This document shows, in pieces, positions 23,631 to 59,914 of a stretch of 64,000 bases of DNA. Positions within the stretch are counted from its first letter, which is position 1. Every line of letters starts with the position of its first letter. Source of the stretch: Lepidodermella squamata. Its lineage: Eukaryota; Animalia; Gastrotricha. The stretch is taken from positions 1-64,000 of the forward strand of contig JBLDXI010000073.1 in the NCBI GenBank assembly GCA_047495785.1, written 5' to 3'. The notes under the pieces are model-generated. The model was given only the letters and a program-made list of their open reading frames with translations, searched no databases and was not told the origin of the DNA. Both the position numbers and the translations under genes were made by a program.

Positions 23631-26600
23631 TTATTGATATTTAGCTTTGAATTCGTCCGCCAGAATACTAACGGTATGCGTATGTCCCTTTATAGCAGCT
23701 GCGTACCAGGGCGTATGGCCGTTTTTATCAGTTGCATTAACATCAGCATTGAATTCCTCAGCAAGAATTCTAACGATTTCCGCTTTTCCTCGCGCGGCAG
23801 CATCGTACAAGGGTGTCTTGCCATCTTTATCACGGGCATTAACATCAGCTCTAAAATTCCTCACCAGCTTTTTAACGGTATCCGCAAATCCATTGCTAGC
23901 AGCTGCGTGTAAGGGTGTCTTGCCATTTTCATAACGGGCATTAACATCAGCATTGAATTCCTCCGCCAGAATCCTGAACGCTTCATCATGCCCTCTTGCT
24001 GCTACAAGTAAGGGCGTCCAGCCATCATTGCGATTTGCTTCAACATCAGCTTCGAAATCCCTCGCCAGCATTCGAACGATATCCGCATGTCCTTTGCTAG
24101 CAGCAGCGTGCAAGGGTGTCTCGCCATCTTTATCACGGGTATTAACATCTGCTTTGAAATCCCTCGCCAGCATTTCAACGATATCCGCATGTCCTTTGCT
24201 AGCAGCTGCGTGCAAGGGTGTCCAGCCATAATCAGAGAGTGCATTAACATCAGCTCCGAAATCCTTCGCAAGCATTCGAACGATTTCCACATGTCCGTTG
24301 CTAGCAGCTGCGTACAAGGGTGTCTTGCCATTTTCATTGCGGACATTAACATCAGCTTTGAATTCCTTCGCCAGAATTCTGACGACCTCCGCATGCCCGA
24401 AATAGGCAGCAGCAAATAAGGGCGTCCAGCCATCATTGCGATTAGCTTCAACATCAGCTTTGAATTCGTCCGCCAGAATTTTAACGATATCCGTATGTCC
24501 GCTGCTAGCAGCTGCGTACAAGGGCGTCTGGCAGTTTTTATCAGTTGCATTAACATCAGCTTTGAATTCCTCCGCCAACATTTTAACGATTTCCGCATGT
24601 CCTTTGCTAGCAGCAGCGTGCAAGGGTGTCCAGCCATAATCAGAGGGTGCATTAACATCTACTTCGAAATCCCTCACCAGCATTTCAACTATTTCCACAT
24701 GTCCGTTGCTAGCAGCTGCGTGCAAGGGTGTCTCGCCATATTCATCACGGGAATTAAAATCTGCTTTGAATTCGTCCGCCAGAATTCTGACGACATTCGC
24801 ATACCCATATCTAGCAGCTGCGTGTAAGGGTGTCTTGCCATGTTCATCACGGACATTAACATCAGCTTTGAATTCCTTCGCCAGAATTCTGACGACCTCC
24901 GCATGCCCGAAATAAGCAGCAGCAAGTAAGGGCGTCCAGTCATCATTGCGATTAGCTTCAACATCAGCTTTGAATTTCTCCGCCAGAATTTTAACGGTAT
25001 CCGCATGTCCCTTGCTAGCAGCTGCGTGCAAGGGTGTCCTGCCATATTTATCACGGGTATTAACATCAGCTTCAAATTTCTTCGCCAGAATTTCAACGTT
25101 TTCCACATGTCCGTTGCTGGCAGCAGCGTACAAGGGTGTCCAGCCATAATCAGAGGGTGCATTAACATCTACTTCGAAATCCCTCACCAGCATTTCTACG
25201 ATATCCGCATGTCCGTTACTAGCAGCTGCGTACAAGGGTGTCTTGCCATGTTTATCACGGGCATTAACATCAGCTCTAAATTTCTTCGCCAGAATTTCAA
25301 CAATATCCGCATGTCCGTTGCTAGCAGCTGCGTACAAGGGTGTCTTGCCATTTTCATCACGGGCATTAACATCAGCTTTAAATTCATTCGCCATAATTTC
25401 AACAATATCCGCATGCCCATTTCTAGCAGCTGCGTTCAAGGGTGTCTTGCCATTTTCATCACGGGCATCAACATCAGCTTTGAAATCCCTGGCTAGAATC
25501 TTCACTATTTCCGAATGGCCCTTCGCGGAAGCAGTGTGCAAGGGTGTCAATCTTTTTTCTGGGGCATCATTATTCCCTTGATTGAACAAATTAATTTTAC
25601 GCCCATCGTTAAAGGCTTTCCCTCCGCGTGGAATATCAACGTTCGCGCTGAATTCTACACCAAGAATCAGCACAATTTCTACGGATCCCTTCTCAACTGC
25701 AAGGTGAAAGGGCGTATTGCCTTCATCATCCAAGTCATCAACGTGTACCTTCAATTTTCCGGCTAAAAATCTAACGATCCCTTCGTTTCCATTTATAACA
25801 GCCATATGCAAGGGTGTCTTTCCATCATTCGACTTAACATTTGCATCCGCTGAGAATTCAACTCCAAGCAAGTTTACCATGTCCAAGTGGCCTCTCATCA
25901 CTGCCAAATGCAGCGGTGTGTAACCCGAAATCATTTTTTTGTTCACATTCTTGATGAAGTTCGCAGCCAGAAATCTTGCTACCTCAATTTGACCTTCCAT
26001 AGCTGCAACATGCAACAAATTCATGCCTTGCGCGTTTGTTATTTTTGCATCAGCCCTCATTTGTTTTGTCAAAATTTCAACAATCTTAGCGTGGCCGTTC
26101 TCCACTGCCGCCCATATTGGCGTCTTACCATCAGCCGCAGCAAGGTTGACACTTACTTTTGAATAGTCCCCAAGAATTTTTATCGCCTTTGTTCGACCAC
26201 AATCAGCAGCGATGTAGAAAGGAGTTCTCCCCAATAGATCTTTAGACAGGGGATCAGCCTTGAATTTGGTTATCAGAAGACCTACTATATCATCACGACC
26301 CTCTTGTGCAGCCAGAAACAACGGGGTAATGCCGTCATCACTCTTGCAGTTCACGTCCAATTGCAGATCTGAGTTTGATAACAACAATTCAATTTCGGCA
26401 GTTTTGTGTTGTCTTATGAGTCGAAAGAGAAACTGAAACGAAGTAGAAGAAATGAATTGAAAATCTCACAATCAAATTTGCATACCCTCTGCGCAACTTT
26501 TGGATCAAATAAATCTGGAAAACTGATCTCATGAGCGGTGAACATAATTAGCTGGGAATTCGGATCATCCAACGAGTTAAAAAGAGTTAGCGGCTCGATA

Positions 26601-27826
26601 CGCCTCGAAATATCTCTGATAAAAAATCCCATAATCATTGTTCGGAATACGGGCGAATAACCGCGCGATTCATCGAAAGGTTTCTGACGGTTTCTGTAAA
26701 TTGATTATCTTAATTTTTCAAAAAACACTTCAGAGCAGGATCATACTCTATGATATCTGGTGCATTTTCAAACTGAAAAGAGGCCTCATGATGAAGTCAA
26801 GTACATAAAACATGATTGAGAAAACTAACAGGCCTGTAAAAATTGGCTAGCTCGAACAAAGTCACACCCAAAGACCACCAATCGCTCTGGTTTGAGTACT
26901 TGCCGTTCCTGTAAAATAATTCCGGCGCCATGTACTGCTCGGTGCCAAGCCTGAAGTTGTACACTGACTGTTGATTGCTATTCGAGGAGCTATTGACGTT
27001 GATGACAGTTTTTAGATAACTGATAATGGCGAATAGATTATCATTCTTACCATTCTTCATAAATCTTCGTCACACCAAAATCCCCAAGCTTTACTGTACC
27101 ATTGTTCAGGAAAATATTCTCTGGCTTGATATCGCGATGGAGCGCTTGCTGAACATGCAGAAAGGCCAGTGCCGAAGCAAGCTGCCCAGCCCATTCTAAC
27201 AGCAAAGCCTGAGGGATGGGAGCTTGTGCCTTCTTCATGTAATCACTCAAATCGCCACCCGAGCAGTATTCCATGACAAGGTAATAAGCAAGAGATCCAG
27301 GCGTTTTCTCCTCTGGGTTAAGAAAAGAATCAGCCGTGTTACAAGGGAAATCCGTCTCGGTAGCAAGGATGATTTCATTTAAATAAGGAGTTTTATTTCA
27401 ATATGAGTTTAGGCGAACGAAAACCACGTTGTTCGGCAGAGCCCGTGCCGATCTGGGTTCAAACTTTCCTTGGCCCCCACTTACCTATAAAAGCTCCAAA
27501 AACATAAACAACATTCGGGTGTGACAATTTGACCAGTTTCACATGCTGCAAAATGTGTAAACGGCATATTTATAACAAATGGAAATGAAGCACGCTGAAG
27601 TTGTTACTTCTTCCTTGCTCAAATTGACCAATCTTTGGGCCATATCAGGTTTATCCGCGTGCTTTTCTAGTATTTTGCTGAGGTTGACTTCTTTTACAGC
27701 GTAAGGCGCCCCGTCGTTGCAGGTCCGCCTGCAGAGCATCGTTGAGCCGAAGTAACCTCTTCCTAAAAACCTCTCGACCATGAAATCCTGGATTGAACAA
27801 TACTTATTCTCCACAGCTTTAGCCAT
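23631..27826 (-). CDS. Kinase-ankyrin protein A: NEK-like Ser/Thr kinase + 26 ankyrin repeats, apparently intact
   Basis: Spliced exons give GRGYFG, YAVK, KEE, HPNVV, MEYCSGGDL, HRDIKPEN, DFG, YMAPE, SDWWSLG. The last exon holds a 918-aa ORF with 26 TPL-type repeats of about 34 aa. Confidence 0.92.
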
Positions 27827-29437: not shown

Positions 29438-29440
29438 ATT

Positions 29441-29849
29441 CTCACATTTTCAATTTAACAGGAATCTTATGATCCATGCACCATACCATAAAGATCTCAA
29501 CTGCTGTAACATCAGCGACTTCCAGTTCAACATGCAACGCGGTATCCCCTTCTAGGATATTGATTTTGGTTTAGTTCAGCCTATGAAAGCTCCAAAAACC
29601 TAAACAATATTAGTAGGATGTGAGATGTGACAATTAGGCATATTTCTTATGCAAAAATACATAATGTAAAAAGGTTGTAAATAGAGCGTGATTAAAATCT
29701 TCAACTCCCCCCACGCAACTTTACTAGCCTGTCTGCGAAATTGAGTTTCGCAGGCGGACCAGGCCGAATATATTGCAGAGTTGGATGGATGCCACCAGGT
29801 CGGATCCTTACTTTCACCATAAATAGTTTCGTGTTTTCAGCGAATGTCA
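29441..29849 (-). pseudogene. Degraded relic of the 5' kinase exons of a kinase-ankyrin paralogue
   Basis: Minus strand reads FADRLVKL (cf. FAERLVNL) and ..CATCCTACTAATATTGTTTAGGTTTTTGGAGCTTTCATAGG (cf. the HPNVVQVFGAF exon), with stops and indels. Confidence 0.55.
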
Positions 29850-30029
29850 TGGACGATTCTCTCTGTTGAATAGCCTTCGGGCTTCTTGCAAACCTTTCAA
29901 TAAGTATGAATCGTTGCACGCAAAAATGTTCCAACATTTAGCTTACCTTTTCATTTCCGATATTTTGCCGGAAAAGCTCCCCATTAATCTCACAATTTAG
30001 TTATAGAGTTTCAACCATTTTCGTTTCAG

Positions 30030-31373
30030 ATCGGCAATGTTGCACGCCCCACTTCGATTTTGTTGGTCGGAGCCTGAATGGCGAGGCAATAAATGGCCAG
30101 CTGCTTGGATAGGAGTCCTACTCAAACGGTGAGTTCAACTTTACAAGATTCAGATAAGGAACACTTTTCCGACGTGATTTTAGCCAGGAAGGTGGTCCCA
30201 TCCTAAGTTTCCTCGGGTACAATTCAGACTCTTTTCCTCAACCTTGATGTATTTTGCCTTGATTCCAGGCAATATCGGCAATTATGTACCGTGAATCTAA
30301 TTCAGATTTCGATAAATACGTCGATATACCCATCGATCACTACTTCATACCTGCGAAATTTCCGTCACGTTTGAAACCTGAAATGTTTGACATTTCAGAC
30401 TAATTTGAACTCGCTGTATTTCAGACATTGTTGAAGATCCGATTAATGGAAATTACGACAAGCCGTACGATACAGATTACGACGTAGGAGTAGCTCACTT
30501 ACGTCTTTCAAGCTCGACCAATCCTGATTTCACGAGCCAGCGCGCCGAAGAGCGGATTCTGTGCTTGCCGGAAAGTTGGGAAGATTTCGAACCAATGAGG
30601 CAAACTATTTATCGCGATTGCGTATCATTGGGTAAGCTGGAGAATCCAATCTTCCTGAATTCACACAACCTAACTAAACCTTCCAACCTCCAAATTTCTT
30701 AGTTTTATCGACCTGAAAATTCTATTATTTTAATGCCTTTCAGGATTTGGAATCAGCAATATTTCAAATTTCAAATTCAAGGCTGTATAAGGCTTTGGCA
30801 GCTCGGCAGCAATTAAGGGACTTCTCGTTCTGCCAGAAGCATTCAAATGTCAAAGACGCGAATTCTAAACGATTTTGCACAACAGCAACCCTCCGCGACC
30901 CTCTCGATTTTGATTGGACTAACAAAACTGTGGTGGCGATGATTCTTGCGAATCAAACGCTACGAGCTCAGTTGATCAAGTCTTTCGGCCAAGTACCATG
31001 TAAAGGCGACTCGGGTGGGCCGATGTTCTGCCCTGTCGAAGGAGCTCCGGAGTATATTTATCGATTCTCCGGCGTTGCGTCTTACCTTTACCATTCAAAT
31101 CCGGTTATGAAAAATATTTGCGGCTTAGGATACCCGGCGATTTTTGTCAATACTGTGAAGCACGTGGAGTGGATTCGACGGCTGATACGTGGCTGGCCTG
31201 AAATGATGAAGACTTTGGAGGCCGATATCAAAAATGCTAAAAAGGAGGCGTTACAGAAGTCGTACATTCATTACCGAGGGATGCTGACACAACTGTTGTT
31301 TGGAAGCCATTTGTTCGCATTAGGAGCAACGATGGAGTTACACACGGACGTAGTGGCTATTTCCGCGATGTAA
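30030..31373 (+). pseudogene. Trypsin-like (S1) serine protease gene, 5' part damaged or missing
   Basis: Exons with IDHYFIP, DYDVGVAHL (Asp), ILCLP, CVSLG/FG, CKGDSGGPMFC (Ser), PAIFVN..EWI. No TAAHC His motif found; in-frame stops upstream. Confidence 0.7.
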
Positions 31374-34012: not shown

Positions 34013-36640
34013 ATGGCCGCAGCAGTGGAGAATACTTTTTCAATAAAAGATTTCACAATCGAAAAGTATTTAGGACGCGGCTATTTTGGCTCAACAATGT
34101 TGTGCAGGCGTAACTGCAACGACGTGGCGCGATACGCTGTCAAAGCAGTAAACCTCACGCTAATTCGTGAACTCCACGCGGGGGAACCACATTTCGCCGA
34201 AAGAATGGTCAATTTGTGCAAGGAAGAGGTCAGCATTATTCATGTTACAATTTTTACTAAGCCATTTCTGCATTCTCAGCATGAGAAATTGTTCAAACTG
34301 GCACACCCTAATGTTGTTCAAGTTTTCGGAGCATCTCATGCTAGGTTGTACGAATGCACATACCAGCAGGTTACCCCATGAACACTACAAATTAGTACAA
34401 TCTTAATCTCTTCTATCAGACTTCTCTCACAGCTCACAACAATGCCGATTTTGTTTTTTTTCACAACAGAGAGGGACGCTTCTGGAGCTGAAATGTGTTA
34501 CCTTGCCATGGAGTACTGCTCAGGAGGCGATTTGGGTGAGTACATGAAGAAAGCCAAAGCTCCAATTCCTCAAGCTTTGCTGCTTGGATGGTCGCTACAA
34601 CTTGCTTCAGCCCTCGCTTTTCTGCATGAAAAGCAAGCCGTCCATCGCGACATCAAACCGACTAATATTTTTATACACAACGAAAATGTGAAACTCGGTG
34701 ATTTCGGCTTGGCAAAGATTTATGATTGGTAGGAGCATCACAACCTTTCGTTATGATAAGTTGACTACTTTTCCAAATCAGCTCTTCAAAAAGTATCCAA
34801 CAGTCATCGTACAACTTCAGGCTTGGTACAGAGCTTTACAAAGCGCCTGAATTATTCGGAAAAATAGGGCATTCCGTCGAGAGCGATTGGTGGTCGTTGG
34901 GTGCAACCTTGTTCGAGCTAGCCAATTTTTACTTGCCTGTAAATTTATGGGCTTTGGTTGTATCATAACAATTTGTAAATTCAAATTACTTTTTTCAGTT
35001 TGAATATGCCTTGGATATCATGACGTAGGTTTCAGCTCAACATTTAAAGTTGATAGCCAATGAGAAAATTTTTCAGAAATCGTCAAAAAAAGTTCGACGA
35101 ATCGCGTGGTTATTCGCCCGCGTTCCGAAACGTCATTTTGGCATTTTTCATTAGAGATAGTTCGAGGCGCATTCCGCCGCTAACTCTTCTGAACTCATTG
35201 AATGATCCGAATTCACAGCAAATCGTAAATAACGGTCATGAGGTCAATTCGGCAGAGTTATTAGATCCGAACTCTCCGCAAATGGTATGCCTAACAAATC
35301 GATAAATAAGTTTTGAATTACACTTCTACATCCTTTCAGCGTCTCTTCCGTCTCATCAGATCTGCAATTGGACGTGAACTGCGAGAGTGATAAAGGCTTC
35401 ACTCCGTTGTTTTTGGCTGCTCAAGAAGGCTGTGATGATGTAGTAGATCTTCTGGTGACAAAGTTCCAAGCGGATCCATTATCTGCGGACCTATTAGGAA
35501 GAACGCCGATGTACGTCGCTGCTGAAGCTGGCCGAGCAAAGATTGTTCGAATTCTTGGGAAAATGCCACAGAGAAGCGTTGAGACAGCGACTGCAGATGG
35601 TAAGAAGCCTATATGGGCTGCTGCGGAGAACGGCCACTCTACGATGGTTAGAATATTGGCGAAAGAAATAGGAGCTAACCCTCAAATAACGAATGAGCAA
35701 GGCATGACATTGCTGCATCGCAGCTCTGGAAGGTCACGTGGAAGTAGCGAGAATTCTAGCAACTGAATTCATCACAAATGTGGAATCGCCTATGCATTCG
35801 GGCTATACACCCTTGCATTTGGCCGTGCTCAGGGGCCACGTGGACGTGGTGAGTTCACTTGTGGCAGAATTCAAAGCTGATGCAAACGCAAAATCGAGAG
35901 ATGGCACGACGCCAGTGCACATCGCAGCACGGGAAGAACACGCAGAGATCTCAAGAATTATTGCCACAGAAGTCAATGTTGAAGCCGCTGATGATAAGGG
36001 CGAGACTCCATTGCACATCGCTGCTAGGAATGGACACGCGGAAGTCGTAAGAATTCTAGCCGAGGAATTCCGTGTTGACGTTAATTCAATCAATAAATAT
36101 GGCTCGACACCCTTGCATCACGCTGTCGATAGGGGATACTCGGAAATTGTGAGAATTCTAGTCGGAAAATTCCATGCTGACGTAGATTTCTCAGACAAAG
36201 AGGGTTCAACTCCCTTGCATTACGCTGTTTTGAATGGAGACGCCGAAATCGTGAGGATTCTAACCGGAGAGCTCCATGCTAACGTTAATGCATCTAATAA
36301 AACTGGATCGACTCCCTTGCATTATGCGGCCGATGGGGGACACGCTGATATCATGAGAATTCTGGTCGGAGAATTCCACGCTGACGTTAATGCTTCCGAT
36401 AAAAACGGCTCGACTGCCTTGCACATCGCTGCTTGGAACGGACAAGCGGAAATCGTGAGAATTCTAACCGATGAATTCCAAGCTGACGTGAATGCCAGAA
36501 ATAAAAAAGTAGACTCGACCATGCATTCGGGCTATACACCCTTGCATTTGACCGTGCTCAGAGGCCACGTGGACACGCGGCAATCGTAAGAATTCTAGCC
36601 GAGGAATTCCGTGCTGACGTTAATTCAATCAATAAAGATT
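34013..36640 (+). pseudogene. Kinase-ankyrin paralogue B, pseudogene
   Basis: All kinase exons present (GRGYFG, HRDIKPTN, DFG, APE). 44-bp deletion at about 35360 and 2-bp deletion at about 35718 relative to paralogue C. Scrambled, truncated 3' end after about 36505. Confidence 0.88.
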
Positions 36641-43500: not shown

Positions 43501-44273
43501 GGCTCTATTCTCTCCTTATATCTCTCCTTATATCTCTCCTTATAGCGGTACCAAATTTGCTTTTTGCAGAATTTTTTTACCAGCTTTTAGCGGAACCAAA
43601 TTTCAGTAAAAAATTTGAAAATTGCAGCGAATTAAATTTTGAGCGGAATCATCCGGTTGCAACTTGTCCCGCCCGGCCGCTCTGCCGCGGATGAGTTGTC
43701 TCAAATTATTGCATATTTTTAATTTTTCACCGAAATTCGGCTCCGCTAAAAGCTGGTAAAAATGTTCTGTTTACTTTTGCTATAATCAAGTTGGGTAGGT
43801 AATGCTGCCGTCGTTCATTTTTATTAATAACAATTTTGAAGTTGATATTTCGGAAAATTTTTAAGCATGTAAGCACGTAAAGTTTTATATCATTTTTTAA
43901 TAATTTACGGTTATTTTCTCACTTTTCAATTTGTCGTTTTCACGGCGTCGGCTGCTATAGAAAGCCGGCCTGATTTTTTACCGCTTTCATACGGCCAAAC
44001 AAAGCTATCAAGACGACGTTATTTAATTTAATTTACATAATTTTTGTGAAAATTTCGGGCTTTGAAATAAGCATAACAGGCGTTCCTATAATTTTTCTTC
44101 AGGGACCACCTTAGCCCTAAATTGAACTTCAGCTGCTTCCCACAGCCACCTTAAGATACCCAACTTTTTGAAAAAAAATTTCATATACTTGATTTTTTTC
44201 TAAGCACAATTATTTCGTGAATTTATTTAAATGCTTAATTTTTATATTCGCATGCTAGAGAATTTTCACTATA

Positions 44274-47200: not shown

Positions 47201-48083
47201 GAGAATATAACTGAAATTCGGGAATATTCAAACAAAATTCAGCGATTCCAGTCAGCGATGAAATGAAACGTGTAGAGAAGCGGGATCATTAATAACCATG
47301 GTTTTTCTTATTTCCCCGAACTTTTACATGGAAAAACTTTTACGATCGCATTTTGCATGTATTTTATTGAACGAGAAGTTAAGGTGGCATTTTACGAATT
47401 TTTTCTCGATTTCTAAAATTAATTGCCGTTTCAAAACTTGGGCGCGAATTTCTACTGTTATCATTCTGTCCTCAATGCCCGTGTGGAAACTGCCCAATTT
47501 TATCAAACTGAAAATAATATCGGTCATCATTGTATTTTACTTTAATTTGCCTGCTCCATTTTTTAGGTGGGAAGCCACATACGCGCCGATTTCGCTAAAA
47601 CCTTGGCGAAATTTCGTTAATATGCCAAAATCAGTGGCCGATTTCTTGGCGTATCGTCTGGTCAAATTCGGCCTCGAATCGAAAAATCAAATCCGAGAAA
47701 TCGAGTCCATTGGAAAAGCTGTGGATGGTCGAAAGGACGTGGCTATGCTGGGAATCGATCACGCTGTAATCGAATCGGTTACCTGGCGCGGATCGACGTT
47801 CAACTCGAATGACATCGTCCTGGCTAACGGCTGCGAGCTTATTTTTTTTAAAATTGAACACTTTGTATATAACCGCAGCGACGGTGAAATTTTAGTTCGA
47901 CTACTGGAAGCGAATTGCAATTATTTTATGGGAACTAATTCGTATCAAATTGTGTCTTATGGTGGCAAATCCATCTTAGCTCCTCTGTCTCAAATTAGCT
48001 TCCCTTGGCCGGTACTGCGTAAGGCAGACCGCTTATTGTTATTAGCAACCCCAAGGGTGTTGTTTTTAATCGAAACCGAATAA
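44274..48083 (+). CDS. EnSpm-type DDE transposase with N-terminal zinc fingers, 5 exons, about 815 aa, frame intact
   Basis: CPVSGC..H..H finger; LHLDDLGMTNALG; ALLGDGKACHEILG..CSQC; FDAFHVFLQG; KHHWSLHF..FGP..WAMRWE. Intron phases 1,1,0,2 join correctly. Confidence 0.9.
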
Positions 48084-48134
48084 TTTAATAAATTATTTTT
48101 TTAGGAGTCGATTGTTAATTTCATTTTTTTTGTC

Positions 48135-49601
48135 ATGGATCGTTATACGAAGAAGCAACAGAAGCAACACGCAGCGCTTTTGCCGCCTGAATTGCGCGAT
48201 TTCAACTTCCCCACGTGTTTTCCACGACCTGACGAGCTTTCTGAACTGGGCCGCGCTTTCGCTGATGGCCACGACGTTTCAGTGAAGGCTCAAAAATCGT
48301 TTCGCAACGAAATCACGAATTACCTATGGTAAGTACTATTTTTTCATCATTTTTTTTATCATGGAAATCAATTTTTAATTTTTAATTTTATTTTCAATTT
48401 ATTTAAAATGTAAAAATAGTTTTCTTCGATAGAAATGTTTCAGAAATTTTTAGAAAATTGATTATAAAATCGTAGCAATTGTATGGAAATTATTATATAT
48501 TTTGTTTATTTTCTGAATTTTTTATTAAAATGTAAAATGTGGGGATTAATCATGTAAAAAATTGAAGCTTATGATTTAGAAATTTTGATTGAAAGATTTG
48601 AGAAATTTTTCGAAATAAAATTTTGGTAATCACTAATTAATTATTATGATAAATTTTAAAATTATGTAATAATTTTGAATTTTTGAATTTTGTTTTATAT
48701 GCATTTTTTATTACAGGAAATTTGTTCCTCGAAATGTTGGCAACCCAGTGCAACGGCGAATTATGTTCGCCAATTTCTTCGACACCCTGCTCCTCAACTA
48801 CCCAGCAATCCCCGGGATTCCAGTGCTTACGGACGGTCGCTCGAATGCAAGGGTGAGTTCGCCTACAACTTGGATAGTGAATTTATAGTCATTTTTCTAT
48901 TTTTCCAGCCCCCGGTATTCGACAAGATTACCTCTGCCATACGCATGCGGGAAAATTGCGGGTTCAATACTCGCCACCAGCGCCCTACTCTGACTCCCTT
49001 GCAGCCTCCGCCCACCCTATTTCTCCAGTCAACACCTACATCTCAAACACCGGCTATTTCGACACCAGAACAGCCAGCTTTTTCAATCCAGCGAGCACCC
49101 TCGGGTGATGAAAATCGCGCTGATTCTCTCAGCGGCAACGTGAGCGGAATCTTTCCGACAGCCGCCGAAATGCCGGAAATGGGTGAATTCTCGGAATTTC
49201 ATCCGCAAGCGCCTTATCAACACGTGCCGGCGGACCTCGTGCAGTCTAGCAGTTCTTCCACGCCCACCTACGCCGTTCTCACCCCGATCAACCCTCAGAC
49301 CTACCAGCAGCCAACTTTTCAAATGGCCCCGGTAGACTACGCTGTGCGTCGCCTGGCTCCAATTTCAATGCCAACGCCTGGCTTGGAGAAGAATATGCCA
49401 GCTGTGGATAATAACTTGCCCGAGTCGCTCAACACAGCTACGGAGATGATTCTAGTCGAGATTCCTGGCAGCAGCGACGGCCAGAAGGCAAATACCAGCA
49501 GTACCCCCGTAATCAAAATTGGCTGCCGTAAACGTGGAGGAGCGTCGAAACAAGATACGGCTGAAGCGGCTCCGCGAGCAACTCGGCAGCGTAAGCAGTA
49601 G
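48135..49601 (+). CDS. Transposon accessory protein (3 exons; P/S/T/Q-rich C-terminus, basic NLS-like tail)
   Basis: Exons 48135-48328, about 48717-48852 and about 48909-49601 splice in frame; lies inside the TIRs; ends CRKRGG..RATRQRKQ*. Confidence 0.7.
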
Positions 49602-51410
49602 CTGTTTTTGCCTCATGTTCGTCTCATATTATCCAAATAGTACACAACATACATCCGATAGTTCAAAATAATTTCGCTGATTTCTAAACTCTCGTTGCTT
49701 CCAATTTATTAGTTGTTAGCTCGAATCGTTTTTGCAAAATAATCTTCCGAACACTCCTCTTCAAACTATATTCAACGAAATTCAACGCCTTAATTTATCC
49801 AGCGACAATAAACATTGTTATTCCGTTTCATGCTTTATGTTTTATGGCGTCTAGTGTAAATATTTTTCTGTTTTGAGCGGTGTATTTTCCATGTGGTCGC
49901 GTCTCCTCCATAATATTATTGTATCATACTGTATTTATGCTGTTATTATATAAGCCTTTTTGTTAGGGAAAAATTCAAATTGTAAATATTCAATTTTTTA
50001 ATCGAGAATAATAATATCTCTGTATACTACTACATGTGTCTTCTTCATCCCGTTGTGACTTCTCCTCATTCTTTCTCATTCTTCCTTTGATTTCGTGTAT
50101 CATCACCTATATTTTGTATGAAACGTGCGCTCATCGAAGGATTTCAAATTATGAAGCAAAAATGTAAATCTCTTGTATTTATCTTGTATCTCTTGTATTT
50201 TAATGCATTTTTATTAAACAAAACAACATATTAATTAAACCTAGAAACACGCTGGAAAATTAATTAAGAAAAAATTCAAATACCACGTTTAACCTGAAAT
50301 AAAACACGCTTCGTATAATCAATGGTCTTTTTGTTGAGTTTATTCCTCATGTGCGCAAGTAGAGGAATTTTCCCGAGATTCATTTCAGAATAATATCAAT
50401 AATAACGTTTGATTGAGGGTTTACGCGTTAATGTCTGCCTAGTCGGGATATTAACGCGTAAATTTAGGTCAATATTGAAGCGTAAAAGATATTTAAGCGT
50501 AAAATTAGGCAATATTTACGCGTCATTTTTATTGAGAGGTTTTACCCGTAAACGCGCTCAAATTTTACCCGTAAATAGAGATTAAGCGTAAATTGCCTGT
50601 GAGTGTGCTCGACCGAAACGCTTACATCGAGACCAAGTCCCACGATAACAGGAGGGCGTTGCATCACGCGGTCACGTCTGGACACGTCGAAACAGCAAGA
50701 CTGCTGCTCGATCGCAACGCTGACATCGAGGCAAAGGGTTACCAGGGCGCGGCTGCGTTGCTTCTAGCGACCTACCTTGGGCGCGTCGAATGTGTCCGGC
50801 TATTGCTCGACAGGGGCGCGAATATCAATGTGAAAACCTACAATGGCTATACATCCCTGGATTTAGCAGTATGCACAGGCCAAACCGAATTAGCCGATCT
50901 GCTACGGACACGCGGCGCATTTCCATCACACCAGCCATGCCCTAATGCTTTCTTCAGCTGAATATAATATATGAAGCAGCAGCTGAATATACGTCGCCTC
51001 AAAACAGCGCGACTAAGCGCAAACCGTCTCAGTTCAGCTCCTTTTCTTAGCGTTAATGATTCATCGAAGTCGCGCTTACAAGCGTGAACTGTCTCGGTCC
51101 AGCTGTTTTGCCTAGTGTGGATGATTTAAATCGAAATAAAATCGAAATAATATAAGGAGAATACACGCGGCTCGATAAACATTTATTTCGCCTTACTCAT
51201 TTCTTGAAAAACATTTTGATCACGAAGGTACGAGGCTTCATGGAGTTCAGCTCCTTTTCTTATTGTTAATGATTCATCGAAGTCGAGCTTGCAAGCCCGA
51301 GGTCGCCCAGGTTCACTTCCGTTTCTCAGTTTTGATTTTTAAAAATTTTTAAATCATATTAAAATCATATTTGTTTTGATAGATGAAAAACATTCCCAAA
51401 TCGATAACAG

Positions 51411-53680
51411 CTCTTCAAAAACCATCCAACAGACATCGTACAACTTCAAGCTTGGTACACAGCTTTACAAAGCGCCTGAATTATTCGGCAAAATAGGGCA
51501 TTCGATCGAAAGCGATTGGTGGTCTTTGGGTGTAACATTGTTCGAGCTAGCCAATTTTTACTTACCTGTTAGTTTTTCTGGCTTTGGTTGTACAATTTGT
51601 TATCCTATTTCTACTTTTCAGTTTCAATATGCCCTGGATATCATGACGTAGGTTTCAGCTCAACATTAAAGTGCATAACCAATGGGGAAAATTTTCAGAA
51701 ATCGTCAAAAAAAGTTCGACGAATCGCGTGGTTATTCGCCTGCGTTCCGAAACGTCATTTTGGCATTTTTCATTAGAGATAGTTCGAGGCGCATTCCGCC
51801 GCTAACTCTTCTGAACTCATTGAATGATCCGAATTCACAGCAAATCGTAAATAATGGTCATGAGGTCAATTCGGCAGAGTTATTAGATCCGAACTCTCCG
51901 CAAATGGTATGCTAAATAAATCGATACATAAGTTTTGAATTACACTTCTGCATCCTTTCAGCGTCTCTTCCGTCTCATCAGACACCACAAAACGAGAGAA
52001 ATTGAAGCGCTGTTATCAAACTCAGATCTGCAATTGGACGTGAACTGCAAGAGTGATAAAGGCTTCACTCCGTTGTTTTTGGCTGCTCAAGAAGGCTGTG
52101 ATGATGTAGTAGATCTTCTAGTGACAAAGTTCCAAGCGGATCCCTTATCTGCGGACCTATTAGGAAGAACGCCGATGTACGTCGCTGCTGAAGCTGGCCG
52201 AGCACAGATTGTTCGAATTCTTGGGAAAATGCCACAGAGAAGTGTTGAGACAGCGACTGCGGATGGTAAGACACCGATATGGGCGGCTGCGGAGAACGGC
52301 CACTCTACGATGGTTAGAATATTGGCGAAAGAAATAGGAGCTAACCCTCAAGTAGCGAATGAGCAAGGCATGACATTGCTGCATGTCGCAGCTCTGGAAG
52401 GTCACGTGGAAGTAGCGAGAATTCTAGCAACTGAATTCATGACAAATGTAAACTCGACCATGCATTCGGGCTATACACCCTTGCATTTGGCCGTGCTAAG
52501 AGGCCACGTGGATGTGGTGAGTTCACTTTTGGCAGAATTCAAAGCTGATTCAAACGCAAAATCGAGAGATGGCACGACACCAGTGCTCATCGCAGCACGG
52601 GAAGGACACGCAGAGATCTTAAGAATCATCGCCACAGAAGTCAATGTTAAAACTGCTGATGATAAGGGCGAGACTCCATTGCACATCGCTGCTAGGAATG
52701 GACAAGCAGGAGTCGTAAGAATTCTGGCCGAGGAATTCCGTGTTGACGTTAATTCAATCAATAAAAATGGCTCGACACCCTTGCATCACGCTGTCGATAG
52801 GGGACACTCGGAAATTGTGAGAATTCTAGTCGGAAAATTCCATGCTGACGTTGATTTCTCCGACAAAGATGGTTCCACTCCCTTGCATTACGCTGTTTTG
52901 AATGGAGACGCCGAAATCGTGAGGATTCTAACCGGAGAGCTCCATGCTAACGTTAATGCATCTAATAAAACTGGATCGACTCCCTTGCATTACGCGGCCG
53001 ATGGGGGAAACGCTGATATCATGAGAATTCTGGTCGGAGAATTCCACGCTGACGTTAATGCTTCCGATAAAAACGGCTCGACTGCCTTGCACATCGCTGC
53101 TTGGAACGGACAAGCGGAAATCGTCAGAATTCTAACCGATGAATTCCAAGCTGACGTGAATGCCAGAAATAAAAATGGCCGGACTCCGTTGCACAACGCT
53201 GCTGTGAAAGGAAGTGCTGAAACCGTGAGAATTCTAGCTGGTGGATTCGATGCTGATGTTGACGCCTCGGATAAAAATGGCTGGACTCCCTTGCACACCG
53301 CTGCTCAGTATGGGCAAGTGGAAACCGTAAGAATTCTAGCCGTGGAATTCAAAGCCGATGTAAATGCTCTATGCATCAACAATGAGGTCTCATCTCGGGT
53401 GTCGAAGATACTCGGTCAAGATCCACCATCTGGAAAATGGATGACACCGCTCATGTGTGCGTCAGTGAATGGTCACTACGCAGTTGTAGATGTTCTAACT
53501 CGCGAGTTGGGAGCCGATGCCAATTACAGAGTGCCGTCTACTGGCTGGTCGGCTCTACTCCTCGCAGAGAATTGCGGCGATGGAGTCTCGGAAGAAAACA
53601 AGCTTAAAACCATAGAAATTCTCCTCTCAGCCGGAGAACAGAATGATGTGCATCCTCCCAAGAAAATAAAGGTTAATTGA
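51411..53680 (+). pseudogene. Kinase-ankyrin paralogue C: only kinase C-lobe exons plus an intact 15-repeat ankyrin exon
   Basis: Starts at the exon with GTQLYKAPELF..SDWWSLG; no N-lobe or HRD/DFG exons upstream; highly similar to B at DNA level; 581-aa open ankyrin ORF. Confidence 0.8.
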
Positions 53681-55196
53681 AGCATTGAAATTCCGAATTG
53701 CATTGAGAAGACTTGAATTAATCGTGTATATTAAAACACTGGTACACGTTGTTCTTCATTAGGGTTTCATTTTAGGGATCCTATTTAGGGTGCGAAGTAT
53801 ACCTCAGCTCCAGGGTCCAACTGCATGGGGGACCCTTTGGTTTCTTCGGCTGGGTCCTTGAAAACAAGTAGGAAACACCTCGAAAAGATGGCAGGTTGAT
53901 TTATCTTCCATACTTTCACGTCGGCTTATCAAGGGGCGAAACCACAAGGTAGCCTCACAGTCGGCGATAACACATGTAACGTCAGTTTCTACCTCAATTG
54001 ATCATTGATAAAAAGTATTAAAAACTAATCTAATTGCTAATTTTTCTAATTGCAACCATGGCTGCAGCTGTAGAGAAAAAGTATTGCTCAATGCAGGAGT
54101 TCGCCTTCGTGAAGTCATTAGGAAGCGGTTCCTTTGGCTCCATGATGTTATGCAGGCGGAGCAACGACGTAGCACCTTACGCTATCAAGGTGGTAAACCT
54201 CACGCAAATTCGTGAAAGGTTTACCGCGGAACCGACGTTCGCCGAAAGGCTGGTAAATTTAAGCAAGGAAGAGGTTGCATCTTGAGCATGCTATATTTTC
54301 CTACTCTATAAACGCCTTATTGCATTTTCAGCATGAAAAATTGGTAAAATTGGCGCACCCCCATATTGTTCAGGTGTTTGGAGCTTTCACAGGTAGGTTG
54401 TGCCAGAGATAACTGCTGCTTCTGAAATAGCACCCTATTCGAGAGCATAACTTGAACTAAACTTGAATTGTGTAGCAGGCTCTAACTAATACAATAAGCA
54501 AAAAAACCCCGAAAATCCCGAAGAAGTTACTTTGATGTTGATGTTGATTTGATTTGATTTCAACTGTAAATAACAAAATATTTAACACATATTTCGATTT
54601 AACATGTTTCGAAGTTTTAGTGTATAGTCACAAATTCTCTGTAAAAGCCACAAAATATCGCCTAAATTACCTCGACGGAATTATCGAGCGCTCCATCGCG
54701 ACATCAAGCCGCAGAACATTCTACTGCTCAATGGCAATGTAAAACTAGGGGATTTTGGGTTGACGAAGATATATGATGAGTAAAATTACAACTGTCCTCT
54801 ATAGAATTTTTCATGCGTCTTGTAGCCCTTCAATCAGTAACCAGCAATCGGCGTACAATTTCAAGATCGGTACAGAGCTTTACAAGGCGCCTGAATTATT
54901 TGGTAAGAAGGAGCACTCGCACGAAAGCGACTGGTGGTCTTTGGGCGTAACTTTGTTCGAATTGGCCAACTTTGACAGGCCTGTTTGTTTTACTTCTTGT
55001 TTTTTTTTCCTTCATCATGGCTCCTTTTTAGTTTGATACTATCCTGGATATCATTGCGTAAGTTTCAGCTTGGAAATATGTTAAAGCGGAAACCAAAACA
55101 ACAAATTTGCAGGAATCCCCCAAAAGAATTTGATGATTCACGCGGTTATTCGCTCGCGTTTCGGAACATCATTTTGGCATTTATCCATCATAAAGA

Positions 55197-57579
55197 CATT
55201 ATGTTTCCGATTTTCCGGGTCAAAGTCCATTGTCAGCCATTGCTGTCATCCATCAGCCACAGTCAGCTCGCGTGTTGTCGTCCAGAGAGCTTGGTGACTT
55301 GGTGACTTGGTGACTTGGTCGTGTCATTGCAATTTTCAATGCAAATTTCGCATTATTTTTCCAGGTGTTACTTATTACACTGCAGCACCTATAATGTGTT
55401 CAGAAAATGATCGGGAAGTCTCTTGCAACCTGCTATCAAGAAACGGGTGAATTGCGGTTACGTCTATGTTAACCTCTTGCTTTTAGTTCGGAATGAGTTT
55501 TTCAAGTAATTTAGGGACTTTTAACTTTTAACCGCTGTTTAAAAATATGGCCAACGATGGTGGATCAAAATGATGCAATTAAACATTTTACAGGTTTGGT
55601 GCTACAAAATCATGACAAGAGTAAGACTGTGATTTGCCAAGCGGGCGCAACTCAATGTTACCATGTGTTAATTGGAGTCAAATAGTGATGCGCTCCGATT
55701 TTGGCTGATCGCGATTAAATCACGATTAAGTCGAATCGAATTTTAATCATGGCGCTCGTCCCAAAATCGTCTTTCCTGGCATCGATTAATCGCCCGATTA
55801 ATCGCCCGATTAATCGGCTATGATAGATGTTCTGACAAGACAGTGTAGAGGCGAATCTGCTTACGTTCATTCCTATTTCTTTTTTTCTTCTATTGCATTC
55901 TTTTTTCTAAGCATAAGAAAAATCTATTCGCTATTTGAAAATTGCATGCATAACAGGAAACTGATTGATTATCGATTATCGATTATCGATTTGCGCTCAT
56001 CCAATGGTCTCTATCAATTAACGGTTCGCATCATCTTGTTCAGCGTAAAAAGTTACCCTAGAGCCCAAATTTTCATCAAAACAGGGTGAATGGTTGTGAA
56101 GAAATCGCGCAATCAAAATTTGGTTTCCGGCTATTGAATTGATCAATTAATTGGATTATAAAAATAAAAATCTCAAAGAAATCGGCAAAACCGCTTCTTT
56201 TCATGTCGAAACCCCCCTTAGAAACCCCGGAGGGGGTAGTTTTTCCCGAGGAATCAGAATCTGCTTTCAGAATTTCAATAGCCATCATACTTCCGGAGAT
56301 AATTAGTACTAATTAATAAATTTATTGCTTTATTGCACTCAATTTATTTTGCATCACCAAAACCAATTTAGGTCGAGTAACACATAGAATTACTCAGTTT
56401 TTTGCGTAGAATCTCGTGGAATTGTCAGATTGAGGATACGAGTTGATAGTAATGCTAGAAGCGCGTTCAAATATTTGTTACAAACAAGCCTATCTGATTT
56501 ATGATTTTACTTGAATTTAATACAGCGCCCACGATTAATCGATTTGATTTGTCGGGCGATTCGATTGACGATTTAATCGCGATTAACACGATTCGATTAT
56601 CGTGGAAATCGAATTTTAATCGATTAAAGAAAAAATAATCGGCGCGCATCACTAGAGTCAAATCAAAGCTAATTTCCGTCTTTTAGGTGAAAAGGAGACA
56701 TCACACCAAGATGTATGCTTATTATCAAACAGAATATTTTTAGGAGAGCCAAATTTGCTTGTTGTATACAATATCCGGGTGGATATCATTGATGGATAGC
56801 ACGATGGATATTGGCCTGAAGGCAAGAAGGCTTTCTATGTGGGCCAAGGGCGCAGCCGAAGGCCGGAATCGTGGCCTGAAGGACGAATATCCATCGCTGT
56901 CCATCGATAACACCCGCATATGGTTGTTATCCGGCGTCAAAAATCATAAAATCCGGATAACGGAGCCTAAGTTTAGATCCTGGCACCATCAACGCAACCA
57001 AGTTAAAAGCAGTGACTTCTTTAAAAATGCAGGCAAATCAGGCAAAGCAGGCCATGATCTCAAGAAGCGATGATCAAGCCTTATGCAGAAAATTGTTTTG
57101 GATTTCTGCTTATCAATCGCGATATTCCAGAAATATTTGAAAATTCATTACTTCTGCAAATGCATTCTGCTTCCCATCTTATTCGGTTTTACCCCAAGCT
57201 AAAAGTCAGTAAAAAGTGAATCCAAATATTTATGTTTTCCTTTCCCCTAAATTCAATTTCTCAAAACAATTTGTTTGTACTTAAGTCATCAAAGCATAGA
57301 TACCTTGACCTGAAAAATTATCAAAACGAAAAGCTGATCGATGATGTCATGGTTATTGATGATACAGGTACAAAATAAAGGTTATAGGTGCTGAAGTGTA
57401 ATAAGTAACACCTGGAAAAATAATGCGAAATTTGCATTGAAAATTGCAATGACACGACCAAGTCACCAAGTCACCAAGTCACCAAGCTCTCTGGACGACA
57501 ACACGCGAGCTGACTGTGGCTGATGGATGACAGCAATGGCTGACAATGGACTTTGACCCGGAAAATCGGAAACATAATG
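55197..57579. mobile_element. Non-autonomous element, 2383 bp, about 198-bp TIRs, 2-bp TSD
   Basis: CATTATGTTTCCGATTTTCCGGG... inverted at 57579; TSD GA; TTGGTGAC tandem repeats inside the TIR. Removing it restores ..HKDSSRR.. of paralogue D. Confidence 0.9.
55683..56654. mobile_element. hAT-type non-autonomous element nested in the 2383-bp element
   Basis: TIR TAGTGATGCGC(T/G)CCGATT; 8-bp TSD GAGTCAAA; many AATCG/CGATT subterminal repeats. Confidence 0.9.
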
Positions 57580-59914
57580 GATAGCTCAAGGCGCGTACGA
57601 CCACTCGATTTGCTCAACTCAGAGATTGATCCAATTTCACAACAAATCCTCGGTTCTGCCAATGAGATCAGTGTTACAGAGTTTTTGCATCCAAGCGCTT
57701 CTCAAGTGGTACGCCAATTTCATTGTGAATTTTTAGACATGATGTTACCAATCCGTTCTAGCTTCTGTTTCGACTCATCAGGCAACACAAAACGAGAGAA
57801 ATCGAAGCACTGTTATCAAATCCAACTTTCAACTTGAGCGTGAACTGCAGAAATGACGAAGACTTCACCCCGTTGTTCATAGCTGCGCAAGAGGGCCACG
57901 ATGACATTGTCGATCTTCTGACGAAATTCAACGCTGATCCGCTTTGTAAAGACTTGATGGGGAGAACGCCCATTTATGTCGCTGCTGACTGTGGTCGAAC
58001 GAAGACCGTTCAAATTCTCGGAAACTTTTCGAGAGAAAGCGCCGACTGTGCGGCTGCGGATGGTAAGACGCCAATATGGGCCGCAGTGGAGAACGGTCAT
58101 GCTAAGATTGTGACATTGCTGGCAAAAGAAATGGAAGCTAACACTCAAATAACGAATGGGCAGGGCATGACATTGTTGCATGTCGCAGCTCTGGAAGGTC
58201 ACTATGAAGTTACACAAATCCTTGCTAAGGATTTCATCAAGAATGTGAACACCAAAATGATATCGGGTTATACACCTCTCGCGGTGATGAGAGGCCACTT
58301 GAACGTAGTGATATTGCTCAGGCATGCATTCTCAGCGAATGTAAATGCAAATACGAAAGATGGCACGCCCTTGCATATTGCATCTCGGAATGGGAGCGCT
58401 GTGCTCGTAACAACTTTGGCCGGATTATTTAATGCGGATGTTAATATTAAGGACGGAGATGGCCGGACTCCCTTACACATAGCTGCTCAGCATGGACACG
58501 CCGGAATCGTCAGAATTCTAGCCGGAGAATTCCGAGCTAACGTTAACGCCCGTGATAGGCTCGGCGAGACTCCCTTGCATAGAGCTATTTGGAATGGAAA
58601 ACCGAAAGGATACGCGGATGTTGTGGGAATTCTGCTGGGAGAATTCAATGCTGATGTTAACGCCGTGGGTTTATATGGCCAGACTCCATTTCATCACGCT
58701 GCTAAAAATGGGGACATGGAAATCGTTCGAATTCTCGGCGATGAGTTTAACGCAAATGTCAACGCGTCGATTTGTGAACGCCATCCCCCTCTTCATGCTG
58801 CTGCTAGCATAGGAAATATCGACATCGTGAGATATCTCATCTTCGAGTGCGATTGCGAAGTCGATGCACGGGATGAAAATAGTAAACGCCTTTTCACTTC
58901 GCTGCTTTCTGCGGCCAAGTTGAAATGGTGCGGATTCTAGCTAGTTCAACGCAGACGTCAATGCTCTGTGCAATGATCACGCGAACAGCATTGCTTGCAT
59001 CGATTGCCGGTCACTATTCAGTCGTGGAACTGCTGATACGAGAACTGAGAGTTGATGTCAATTAACGAGTGGCATCGACAGGTTGCACAGCTTTGCTAGT
59101 GGCACAGAATTGTCTTGATAGCGTTTCAGATGAAGACAAGCGTCGAACTGTTGACGTTCTTCAAGCAGCCGGGGGACAACGTAGATTCAGCTCATCAGTC
59201 AATACGGAAAGAAACAAGTTTAGAGATGGACTCAATCGCTTTTTACCAGCTATATATGATACTTGGAGCTACGTTTTGAGCCGACTTGCCACCCGTTCGG
59301 GTAAATGTTTAATGGTCGTGCCAGGGTGGGTCGCCAGATAGGGCCATCACCGCAAGAGAAAACATGTTTTTGATATGTTTTCGACGGTTTCTTGTAAATG
59401 ATTTGTTTAAGCAGAAATAGTCCCAACGCAGCATTTATGATTGAGACACTCCCGCTCAGGTCCATCGTCCATCGTCCATCGTCCGTGCACTAATAGAGGG
59501 AGCAACACAATTCAAAATCGCTCAATTCCGGACCCCGCTTAGTTCCGTGCAGGTAAAAGTTTAAAAATTCCGCCTTTTCCCTCATTTTCTTCACGGAAGT
59601 TCGATAATTTTATTGCCTAACCATTTTCATTTATCAACCGACCAAGCTGTCCTCTTCTTGGAGTTATGACTCCTCAAATAAATTAATGAATGAATAAACA
59701 AGAAAGAAAATAAGTCACGACAGCTTGTATGATAGCACACGTATTTATATGCTTGCATAGACTTGTTTAACTTGTGTGCATCTCTCAGCAAACTATTTTT
59801 TGACAAGAAGAATGGCGTTATAGAGCGCAGTGAGCGATCCTACGAGGTTAATTTTCCTTCCCTATCTGCCTCATTTATAGAGTTTTTACCGATATTATCA
59901 GTCATTATACATTT

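What the first reader, a model, noticed from the sequence alone, without database searches (positions are those of the whole stretch)
23631..59341. Birth-and-death cluster of NEK-like kinase fused to variable ankyrin arrays: candidate intracellular sensor family
Seen: five paralogues in 36 kb (A intact with 26 repeats; B pseudogene; C with 15 repeats but no kinase N-lobe; D pseudogene; relic at 29.4-29.8 kb). The first five repeats are shared (TPLFLAAQEG, GRTP.Y.AA, GKTPIWAA, LLHVAA.EG, SGYTPL); the distal array differs in number and sequence. Known: kinase-then-ankyrin order occurs in RIPK4/ANKK1, which are TKL kinases, whereas MEYCSGGDL / HRDIKP.NIF / KLGDFG here is NEK-like. Inference: a lineage-specific receptor family with a constant signalling end and a variable binding end, analogous to repeat-variable NLR-like sensors.
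Basis: partly seen in the sequence, partly recalled or inferred. Interest (0 to 1): 0.8.

Follow-up and report, generated by a model that had tools for sequence, protein, structure and literature searches.

The report
Decaying cluster of kinase-ankyrin genes
This stretch of a small invertebrate's genome (probably the gastrotrich Lepidodermella squamata) holds one complete and four broken copies of a gene joining a NEK-like protein kinase to a long, variable row of ankyrin repeats; the family is large and restricted to this lineage as far as the searches reach, and nothing shows it is an immune sensor.

Summary
The window has five copies of one gene type, a NEK-like Ser/Thr kinase followed by an ankyrin array.

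- **A** is a complete seven-exon ORF of 1245 aa with 26 repeats.
- **B** is a pseudogene: lost splice donor, two frameshifting deletions, truncated array.
- **C** is a 5'-truncated duplicate of a B-like copy, with exons 4-7 and 15 repeats.
- **D** is a pseudogene: half of exon 3 lost, a transposon in exon 6, a frameshift and a stop.
- The fifth copy is a 170-bp relic.

About 33 close copies exist in the genome, and more than 150 related kinase exons. Kinase exons and the first five repeats are under purifying selection (dN/dS 0.13-0.40). The middle of the array varies in number and sequence. Most relatives also keep a conserved C-terminal cap, which A lacks.

The "sensor" reading is not supported by any direct evidence. 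A's repeats vary most at the usual binding positions, as ankyrin repeats generally do, but show no excess of amino-acid change there (pN/pS 0.46-0.89).

The scan has already reported this family many times on other DNA of this genome (43 notes).

The parts
27608..27826 (-). Gene A exon 1: start codon, G-loop, VAIK lysine, start of helix C
   Evidence: NEK1 is the best PDB match
27485..27545 (-). Gene A exon 2 (beta4 region, HVKLVKLSHPNVV...)
   Evidence: AG acceptor and GGTAAGT donor, conserved in paralogues
27051..27312 (-). Gene A exon 3: MEYCSGGDL, HRDIKPENIF, KLGDFG
   Evidence: Pfam Pkinase E 4e-19
26830..26989 (-). Gene A exon 4: activation loop, YMAPE, DWWSLG
   Evidence: Pfam Pkinase E 2e-11
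26747..26772 (-). Gene A exon 5 (26 nt); donor position fixed by comparison with eight paralogues
26486..26693 (-). Gene A exon 6: end of the kinase C-lobe plus a family-specific linker
23631..26432 (-). Gene A exon 7. Linker, five to six conserved N-terminal ankyrin repeats, then about 20 distal repeats (26 in all). 102-bp period x 18.1 and a 408-bp higher-order period. The stop lies inside a repeat and there is no C-terminal cap.
29584..29754 (-). Relic: end of exon 1, intron 1 and exon 2 of a fifth copy, with a stop and a 10-nt insertion
   Evidence: nhmmer E 6e-21
34013..36589 (+). Gene B, a pseudogene. Kinase exons keep their motifs. The exon-2 donor is GT->CT. A 44-nt deletion lies at 35355/6 and a 2-nt deletion at 35717/8. 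The array is rearranged after about 36507.
51408..53680 (+). Gene C, a 5'-truncated duplicate (93.5% identical to B). Exons 4-7 only, with an open 581-aa last-exon ORF, 15 repeats and the conserved C-terminal cap. No in-frame start lies upstream of exon 4.
54058..59200 (+). Gene D, a pseudogene. Exons 1, 2 and 4 are readable. The 5' half of exon 3 is replaced (54400-54684). Exon 6 is split by a transposon. A frameshift lies near 58890 and a stop in the cap.
55190..57585 (.). Non-autonomous TIR element inside exon 6 of D. TIRs of 198 bp are 99.5% alike (55197-55394 / 57382-57579). A second, roughly 0.97-kb repeat is nested inside it. Many copies exist genome-wide, one of them in another family member at C42:109.8-111.2 kb.
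22551..23299 (.). 750-bp MITE with 216-bp TIRs, 332 bp downstream of A's stop. More than 30 copies in the genome, up to 99% identical. A diverged copy lies at 59913-60295, downstream of D.

Best explanation
The region is one cluster of a large gene family, restricted to this lineage as far as the searches reach, in a small-intron animal genome. The genome's size and contig number match the published Lepidodermella squamata assembly.

**Architecture.** Each full gene encodes a cytosolic protein of about 1200 aa:
- an N-terminal NEK-like Ser/Thr kinase in six short exons;
- a family-specific linker;
- one long last exon that holds a conserved module of five to six ankyrin repeats, a middle block of 34-aa repeats variable in number and sequence, and usually a conserved two-repeat C-terminal cap.

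**How it most likely works (inferred).** The ankyrin solenoid is a protein-binding arm that brings an active kinase to partners or to a place in the cell. The conserved N-module and cap do a job common to all members. The middle block sets the specificity.

**How it evolves (shown).** Evolution is by birth and death.
- Tandem and dispersed segmental duplication: B and C are a recent pair with dS about 0.1, and A's sister lies 75 kb away.
- Unequal exchange inside the array: 408-bp block duplications, and last-exon open frames of 149-1504 aa.
- Loss by frameshifts, truncation and transposon insertion.

Only A in this window could still make a full protein. Even A has lost the cap.
For: - Gene models and lesions.
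- Pfam finds Pkinase and 23 Ank stretches and nothing else.
- Family size: at least 150 scored matches of 486 candidates to kinase exon 3. About 33 copies keep the specific linker plus first repeats at 49% identity or more, on ten contigs and often in tandem.
- The same exon structure and the kinase-then-ankyrin order recur in most of the 20 fetched paralogues.
- Purifying selection: dN/dS is 0.13-0.26 on kinase exons and 0.18-0.40 on the first five repeats.
- Catalytic Asp residues are kept in all but two of about 24 copies inspected.
- Tree: A + C73:101k (100/99). B + C (100/100) sit inside a separate 14-member clade.
- The C-terminal cap is conserved even in distant subfamilies.
- NEK affinity.
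- No transmembrane-like stretch.
- No close relative of the ankyrin N-module in two word searches of 5.8 billion proteins or in JGI metagenome contigs.
Against: - No transcript, protein or functional data. Expression and splicing of A are inferred from open frames, GT-AG sites and conservation alone.
- A lacks the cap, and its young repeats show weak constraint (framework pN/pS 0.81), so A itself may be on its way out.
- Exon 4 gives no NEK-specific signal, and the activation loop is not NEK-like.
- Absence from other species is weak evidence. The databases appear to hold no gastrotrich proteomes, and one kinase fragment from another sample (P0228) resembles the family.
Confidence: 0.72

Rival explanations
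1. Intracellular non-self or damage sensor family. The variable ankyrin array binds pathogen or foreign ligands and the kinase signals, by analogy with repeat-variable NLRs.
For: - Large copy number, rapid turnover and variable array length.
- In A's distal repeats, five of the six positions randomised in designed ankyrin binders fall among the six most variable of 34 (p about 1e-4).
- Fungal NLRs with ankyrin repeats show comparable variability (PMC4986451).
Against: - Those positions are the variable ones in ankyrin repeats generally, which is why they were chosen for DARPin libraries (my own knowledge).
- At those positions dN/dS is 0.89 over all repeat pairs, and pN/pS is 0.46 among the youngest pairs. 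Both are below 1, and the second is below the framework value.
- Repeats are only 75% identical on average, not the near-identical type of fungal NLR arrays.
- No NACHT/NB-ARC, TIR, death or other immune domain is present.
- No infection or polymorphism data exist.
Confidence: 0.13
2. Diversified ciliary or cytoskeletal targeting kinases, as proposed for the Giardia Nek-ankyrin proteins. Each paralogue places a NEK-type kinase at a particular structure of a heavily ciliated animal.
For: - NEK affinity.
- Giardia precedent: 198 Neks, 133 with 1-26 ankyrin repeats. Deleting a repeat changed localisation, and several Neks sit on flagellar or disc structures (PMC3218828).
- Long-term purifying selection on the kinase and on the constant ankyrin modules.
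Against: - A housekeeping structural role fits poorly with about a third of close copies having short or broken last exons, and with four of five copies dead in this window.
- No localisation data exist.
- The Giardia repeats are a different subclass (TALM motif), so this is convergence at best.
Confidence: 0.25
3. Mostly non-functional, passively amplified DNA: segmental duplicates in a repeat-rich, transposon-active region, with open frames surviving by chance.
For: - Four of five local copies are dead.
- Young transposons lie in and beside the genes.
- A lacks the cap and shows a relaxed pN/pS in young repeats.
Against: - dN/dS of 0.13-0.40 across old paralogue pairs with dS 0.5-1.3 means the genes were selected as proteins through most of their history.
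- Catalytic residues, splice sites and the cap are conserved across subfamilies.
Confidence: 0.08
4. Assembly artefact: the copies are chimeras or false duplications from the whole-genome-amplified long-read assembly.
For: - The likely source assembly was made from MDA-amplified DNA (PMC11660948).
- The first 15,146 bases of this window form a 99.4% palindrome.
- Some family copies elsewhere are identical to each other.
Against: - The five local copies differ by 6.5-30% and carry distinct lesions and transposon insertions. Collapsed or chimeric reads cannot produce that.
Confidence: 0.02

Closest known systems
Giardia lamblia Nek-ankyrin kinases (with the Protein 21.1 family), Manning et al. 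2011, PMC3218828
   Same: - N-terminal Nek-type kinase followed by a variable ankyrin array of 1-26 repeats.
- Hundreds of copies, with repeats gained and lost between close relatives.
- Kinase-less ankyrin-only relatives, which resemble copy C here.
- Some very recent duplicates.
   Different: - The Giardia family is in a protist. Its authors stated that the Nek-ankyrin association was seen in no other species.
- Giardia repeats belong to a TALM subclass that is absent here.
- 71% of Giardia Neks lack catalytic residues, whereas this subfamily keeps them.
- Here the array has a conserved N-module and C-cap, and the genes have introns.
- Common descent is not shown; convergence is likely.
NEK1/NEK3/NEK5-type NIMA-related kinases of animals
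   Same: - Best solved-structure match is NEK1, then NEK2. The only named database hits are Nek3 and Nek5.
- The HRDIKP-NIFL catalytic loop and MEYC-GGDL hinge resemble NEK motifs (my own knowledge).
   Different: - Only 34-43% identity.
- The activation loop reads GT..Y.APE rather than the NEK form.
- Canonical NEKs carry coiled coils, RCC1 or other tails, not ankyrin arrays.
- Placement inside the NEK clade was not tested on a full-domain tree.
RIPK4 / ANKK1 (TKL) and DAPK1 (CAMK): kinase followed by ankyrin repeats
   Same: Domain order: kinase, then ankyrin repeats.
   Different: - None of these kinases appears among the top 60 solved-structure matches.
- They are conserved single-copy genes with 8-11 repeats.
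- DAPK1 adds ROC-COR and a death domain, neither of which is present here.
Fungal NLRs with highly conserved, hypervariable ANK/TPR/WD repeats (Dyrka et al. 2014, PMC4986451)
   Same: Repeat arrays that change length by internal recombination, and large variable families.
   Different: - No NACHT/NB-ARC domain is present.
- Repeats here are only about 75% identical.
- No excess of replacement changes at binding positions.

Membership tests
Eukaryotic protein kinase, catalytically competent | G-loop, VAIK Lys, helix-C Glu, HRD Asp, DFG Asp, APE | tested here: met
   All are present in A's exons 1-4. B keeps them too. D has lost the helix D-E segment, and C lacks everything before the activation loop.
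NEK (NIMA-related kinase) family | Closest similarity over the catalytic domain is to NEKs | tested here: met
   - NEK1 is top for A's exon 1.
- NEK1 is the best Ser/Thr kinase for the exon-3 profile.
- For a contiguous 179-aa distant paralogue: NEK1 86.6 bits and NEK2 73.9, against 69 or less for others.
- The named database hits are Nek3 and Nek5 only.
- Exon 4 is uninformative.
NEK (NIMA-related kinase) family | Placement inside the NEK clade on a full-domain kinase tree with reference kinomes | not tested
   This needs the spliced kinase domain, and that joined step was left out. No named reference set was available locally.
NEK (NIMA-related kinase) family | NEK-type activation loop (GTP.Y.SPE) | tested here: not met
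   The family consensus is LGT.LY.APELF. The feature is recalled from my own knowledge of NEK sequences.
Giardia-type Nek-ankyrin | N-terminal Nek kinase followed by a variable ankyrin array, in a large expansion | tested here: met
Giardia-type Nek-ankyrin | TALM motif at the start of the repeats | tested here: not met
   Repeats start TPLH/TPLY/TPLF, with no TALM in A or C. Definition from PMC3218828.
RIPK4/ANKK1 (TKL kinase-ankyrin) | Kinase domain of the RIPK/TKL type | tested here: not met
   No RIPK or ANKK1 among the top 60 PDB matches.
NLR/STAND sensors | Central NACHT or NB-ARC NTPase between the effector and repeat domains | tested here: not met
   Pfam finds only Pkinase and Ank families in A and C.
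Hypervariable repeat receptors under diversifying selection | dN/dS above 1 at predicted binding positions of near-identical repeats | tested here: not met
   - dN/dS is 0.89 at binding positions against 0.58 for the framework, over all pairs.
- pN/pS is 0.46 against 0.81 among the youngest pairs.
- Mean repeat identity is 75% at the nucleotide level.
- Counts are small.

The most novel reading that the evidence does not exclude
The family is an animal counterpart of repeat-variable intracellular receptors. Its members would be active NEK-like kinases whose middle ankyrin block is reshuffled by unequal exchange to recognise changing, possibly foreign, protein ligands. Such a recognition system would have arisen independently of NLRs and in parallel with the Giardia Nek-ankyrin expansion.
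Probability: 0.12. Interest if true: 0.8.

Novelty: new variant of a known kind. Interest (0 to 1): 0.45.

Why it matters
The fusion of a Nek-type kinase to long ankyrin arrays, in hundreds of copies, was reported as unique to Giardia. Finding the same design, independently built and still mostly catalytically intact, in an animal raises a question: is this a general way to aim one kinase at many targets?

The family also offers a natural series of ankyrin binders with fixed caps and a variable core. This particular locus adds three things:
- a dated series of decay states: intact, cap-less, truncated, transposon-hit, relic;
- the finding that the arrays have two conserved ends;
- a negative test for positive selection.

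The family itself is not new to the scan, which had already noted it elsewhere in this genome.

Tried and rejected
- **Big profile search.** I searched 1.84 billion representatives with a profile of exon 3. The top 150 were dominated by proteins with several kinase domains, and ten checked had no ankyrin repeats. The search therefore gave neither a classification nor outside relatives, apart from the fragment P0228.
- **P0033 and P0087.** These kinase-plus-ankyrin proteins came from the first word search. Their kinases are only 39% and 28% identical to exon 3 and are not relatives.
- **Protein atlas look-up.** It returned only 'protein kinase'.
- **Exon 4 for classification.** It is generic, with AGC kinases on top.
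- **Shared flank idea.** I considered that the repeats just downstream of A and D were a shared ancestral flank. They are copies of a common MITE.
- **Fusion of C with its upstream gene.** I considered that C is fused to the upstream ankyrin gene (ORFs at 40.5 and 50.6 kb). That gene ends with a stop at 50961, and no frame links it to C.
- **Expression evidence.** None could be obtained.
Full report
**What the sequence is**

The window is G000:C73:1-64000 of a 121.2-Mb, 151-contig animal genome. It has low gene density, short GT-AG introns and about 41% G+C. Size and contig number match the published Lepidodermella squamata assembly: 122 Mb, 157 contigs, MDA-amplified DNA and HiFi reads (PMC11660948). 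An earlier scan note suggested this species. The match rests on assembly statistics only. That paper mentions neither kinases nor ankyrin repeats.

**Checking the observation**

tblastn with the pieces of copy A, plus a self-blastn, locate four full or partial copies and one relic.

*Copy A (minus strand).* I read it by hand and fixed its exon borders by comparison with paralogues.
- Exons: 27826-27608, 27545-27485, 27312-27051, 26989-26830, 26772-26747, 26693-26486, 26432-23631.
- All six introns are GT-AG, of 62/172/61/57/53/53 nt.
- The frame is open throughout: 3738 nt, 1245 codons.
- The kinase keeps GRGYFG, the VAIK lysine, HRDIKPEN, DFG, YMAPE and DWWSLG.
- The last exon encodes a linker and 26 repeats of 34 aa. 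Tandem Repeats Finder gives 102 bp x 18.1 at 75% matches, and a 408-bp higher-order period.

*Copy B (34013-36589, plus strand).* It keeps readable kinase exons but has four lesions:
- a GT->CT change at the exon-2 donor;
- a 44-nt deletion at 35355/6;
- a 2-nt deletion at 35717/8;
- an array that departs from C after about 36507 and stops at 36589.

*Copy C.* It is 93.5% identical to B from 51408 onward. That point lies in intron 3, so C lacks exons 1-3. Its exons 4-7 are open, and the 581-aa last-exon ORF holds 15 repeats. No in-frame start lies upstream of exon 4.

*Copy D (54058 to about 59200).* It has four lesions:
- the 5' half of exon 3 is lost;
- a 2.4-kb composite non-autonomous element with 198-bp terminal inverted repeats (99.5% alike) sits inside exon 6;
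- a frameshift lies near 58890;
- a stop lies in the cap.

*The relic.* At 29584-29754 (minus strand) it matches the end of exon 1, intron 1 and exon 2 with nhmmer E = 6e-21.

- Most relatives end in a conserved two-repeat C-terminal cap. It is present in C, D and 11 of 20 fetched paralogues, including distant subfamilies. The array thus has two constant ends and a variable middle.
- A, its sister copy and a few others stop inside a repeat and lack the cap. 'Intact' for A means an open frame, not the full family architecture.
- A 750-bp MITE lies 332 bp past A's stop.

**Family size and history**

- Kinase exon 3 finds at least 150 scored matches of 486 candidates in the genome.
- The family-specific linker plus first repeats finds about 33 copies at 49% identity or more, on ten contigs and often in tandem. 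Their last-exon open frames run from 149 to 1504 aa. About a third are under 450 aa, a rough sign of disruption.
- Most of the 20 fetched loci show the same exon order and the kinase-then-ankyrin design. Two of about 24 copies have lost a catalytic aspartate.
- I built a tree on the first 650 nt of the last exon. A pairs with a copy 75 kb away on the same contig (100/99). B pairs with C (100/100) inside a separate 14-member clade that also holds copies from three other contigs. The window's cluster is therefore not one local burst.
- dS is about 0.1 for B-C and 0.5-1.3 for the other pairs. dN/dS is 0.13-0.26 for the kinase exons and 0.18-0.40 for the first five repeats. The proteins were under selection through most of their history.
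- The same transposon family that broke D also sits in another family member on contig 42.

This is birth-and-death evolution in the ordinary sense.

**Kinase class**

Every search used single exons or contiguous open frames by reference.
- A's exon 1 has NEK1 as its best solved-structure match.
- A's exon 3 has NEK1 second, behind a JAK-family hit (TYK2).
- A profile of 18 family exon-3 peptides has NEK1 as its best Ser/Thr kinase, close to GCN2 and ULK.
- Exon 4 is generic.
- A distant paralogue carries exons 1-3 as one 179-aa open frame. It gives NEK1 86.6 bits and NEK2 73.9, with everything else at 69 or less.
- In the word search of 5.8 billion proteins, that paralogue's only named hits are Nek3 and Nek5.

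'NEK-like' is supported, but membership in the NEK clade is not proven.

**Distribution**

- Two word searches with the ankyrin N-module, covering long and short length classes, returned only generic ankyrin proteins at 40% identity or less.
- A scan of JGI metagenome contigs did the same, at 47% identity or less.
- One 189-aa kinase fragment from another sequencing run (P0228, Logan SRR21279729) resembles the family. It is at most 62% identical to any copy here, so relatives probably exist in another organism.
- The databases seem to hold no gastrotrich proteomes, so 'lineage-specific' is provisional.

**Testing the sensor idea**

- In A's distal repeats, five of the six positions that designed ankyrin binders randomise are among the six most variable of 34 (hypergeometric p about 1e-4). 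This holds for ankyrin repeats in general, so it does not single out a receptor.
- At those positions dN/dS is 0.89, against 0.58 for the framework.
- Among the ten youngest repeat pairs, pN/pS is 0.46 at those positions and 0.81 in the framework.
- Repeats average 75% nucleotide identity, with a maximum of 95%. That is far from the near-identical arrays of fungal NLRs (PMC4986451).
- Earlier scan notes report an excess of replacement changes in the youngest arrays elsewhere in this genome. That pattern is not reproduced in this gene.
- Pfam finds no NTPase, TIR, death or other immune-type domain.
- No exon has a membrane-spanning stretch, so the protein is cytosolic.

**Comparison with the known**

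The closest precedent is the Giardia Nek expansion: 198 Neks, 133 with 1-26 ankyrin repeats, plus ankyrin-only relatives. Its authors described the Nek-ankyrin association as unique to that species (PMC3218828). Three differences stand out:
- the repeats here lack the Giardia TALM motif;
- most kinases here look active;
- the arrays here are capped at both ends.

Independent origin is the likelier reading. Literature searches found no description of such a family in animals.

**Verdict**

- The family, its two-part logic and its turnover are real.
- The immune-sensor reading is an analogy without evidence. At this locus it fails the one test I could run.
- The scan has already reported this family on other DNA of the same genome: 43 notes hold 'ankyrin kinase'.

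This window adds a well-resolved decay series, the conserved cap and a negative selection test.

Noticed in passing
window 1-15146: The first 15,146 bases are a 99.4% inverted repeat of themselves (a palindrome centred near 7573) at the very start of contig C73. Given an MDA-amplified assembly, this looks like a chimeric fold-back. It overlaps the 'Cys-rich lectin' region that another note covers (11350-19540).
   Followed up: partly
window 39000-50961 (+): A separate gene with ankyrin-coding ORFs at 40535-41011 and 50593-50961. It ends with a stop 450 bp upstream of copy C, and no reading frame links it to C.
   Followed up: partly
window 30747-31373 (+): An ORF with a weak trypsin-type serine-protease match (GDSGGP motif, Pfam Trypsin E 0.003) lies between copy A and copy B.
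   Followed up: no
window 50961-51400: Two copies of a short repeat lie between the upstream ankyrin gene and copy C, at the 5' breakpoint of the B-to-C duplication. They were seen only as two similar translated stretches.
   Followed up: no
G000:C36:397890-414018: Three family copies spaced 7,916 bp apart are identical over the 650 nt compared. This is either a very recent tandem triplication or an assembly duplication.
   Followed up: no
G000:C7:2296-2299k and G000:C32:111-114k; also C8:55-58k and C42:1850-1853k: Pairs of family loci on different contigs give identical or mirrored matches, which suggests retained haplotigs or recent segmental duplications.
   Followed up: no
L021 (Logan SRR21279729 contig, 602-1171): A 189-aa kinase fragment from another sequencing run has the family's N-lobe features in one uninterrupted frame. 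It is at most 62% identical to any copy in this genome, so it probably comes from a related organism.
   Followed up: partly
L017 (G000:C42:1848500-1858000): Two neighbouring distant paralogues of the kinase have fewer introns, and no ankyrin array lies within 5 kb downstream. They are possibly the ankyrin-less, older form of the family.
   Followed up: no
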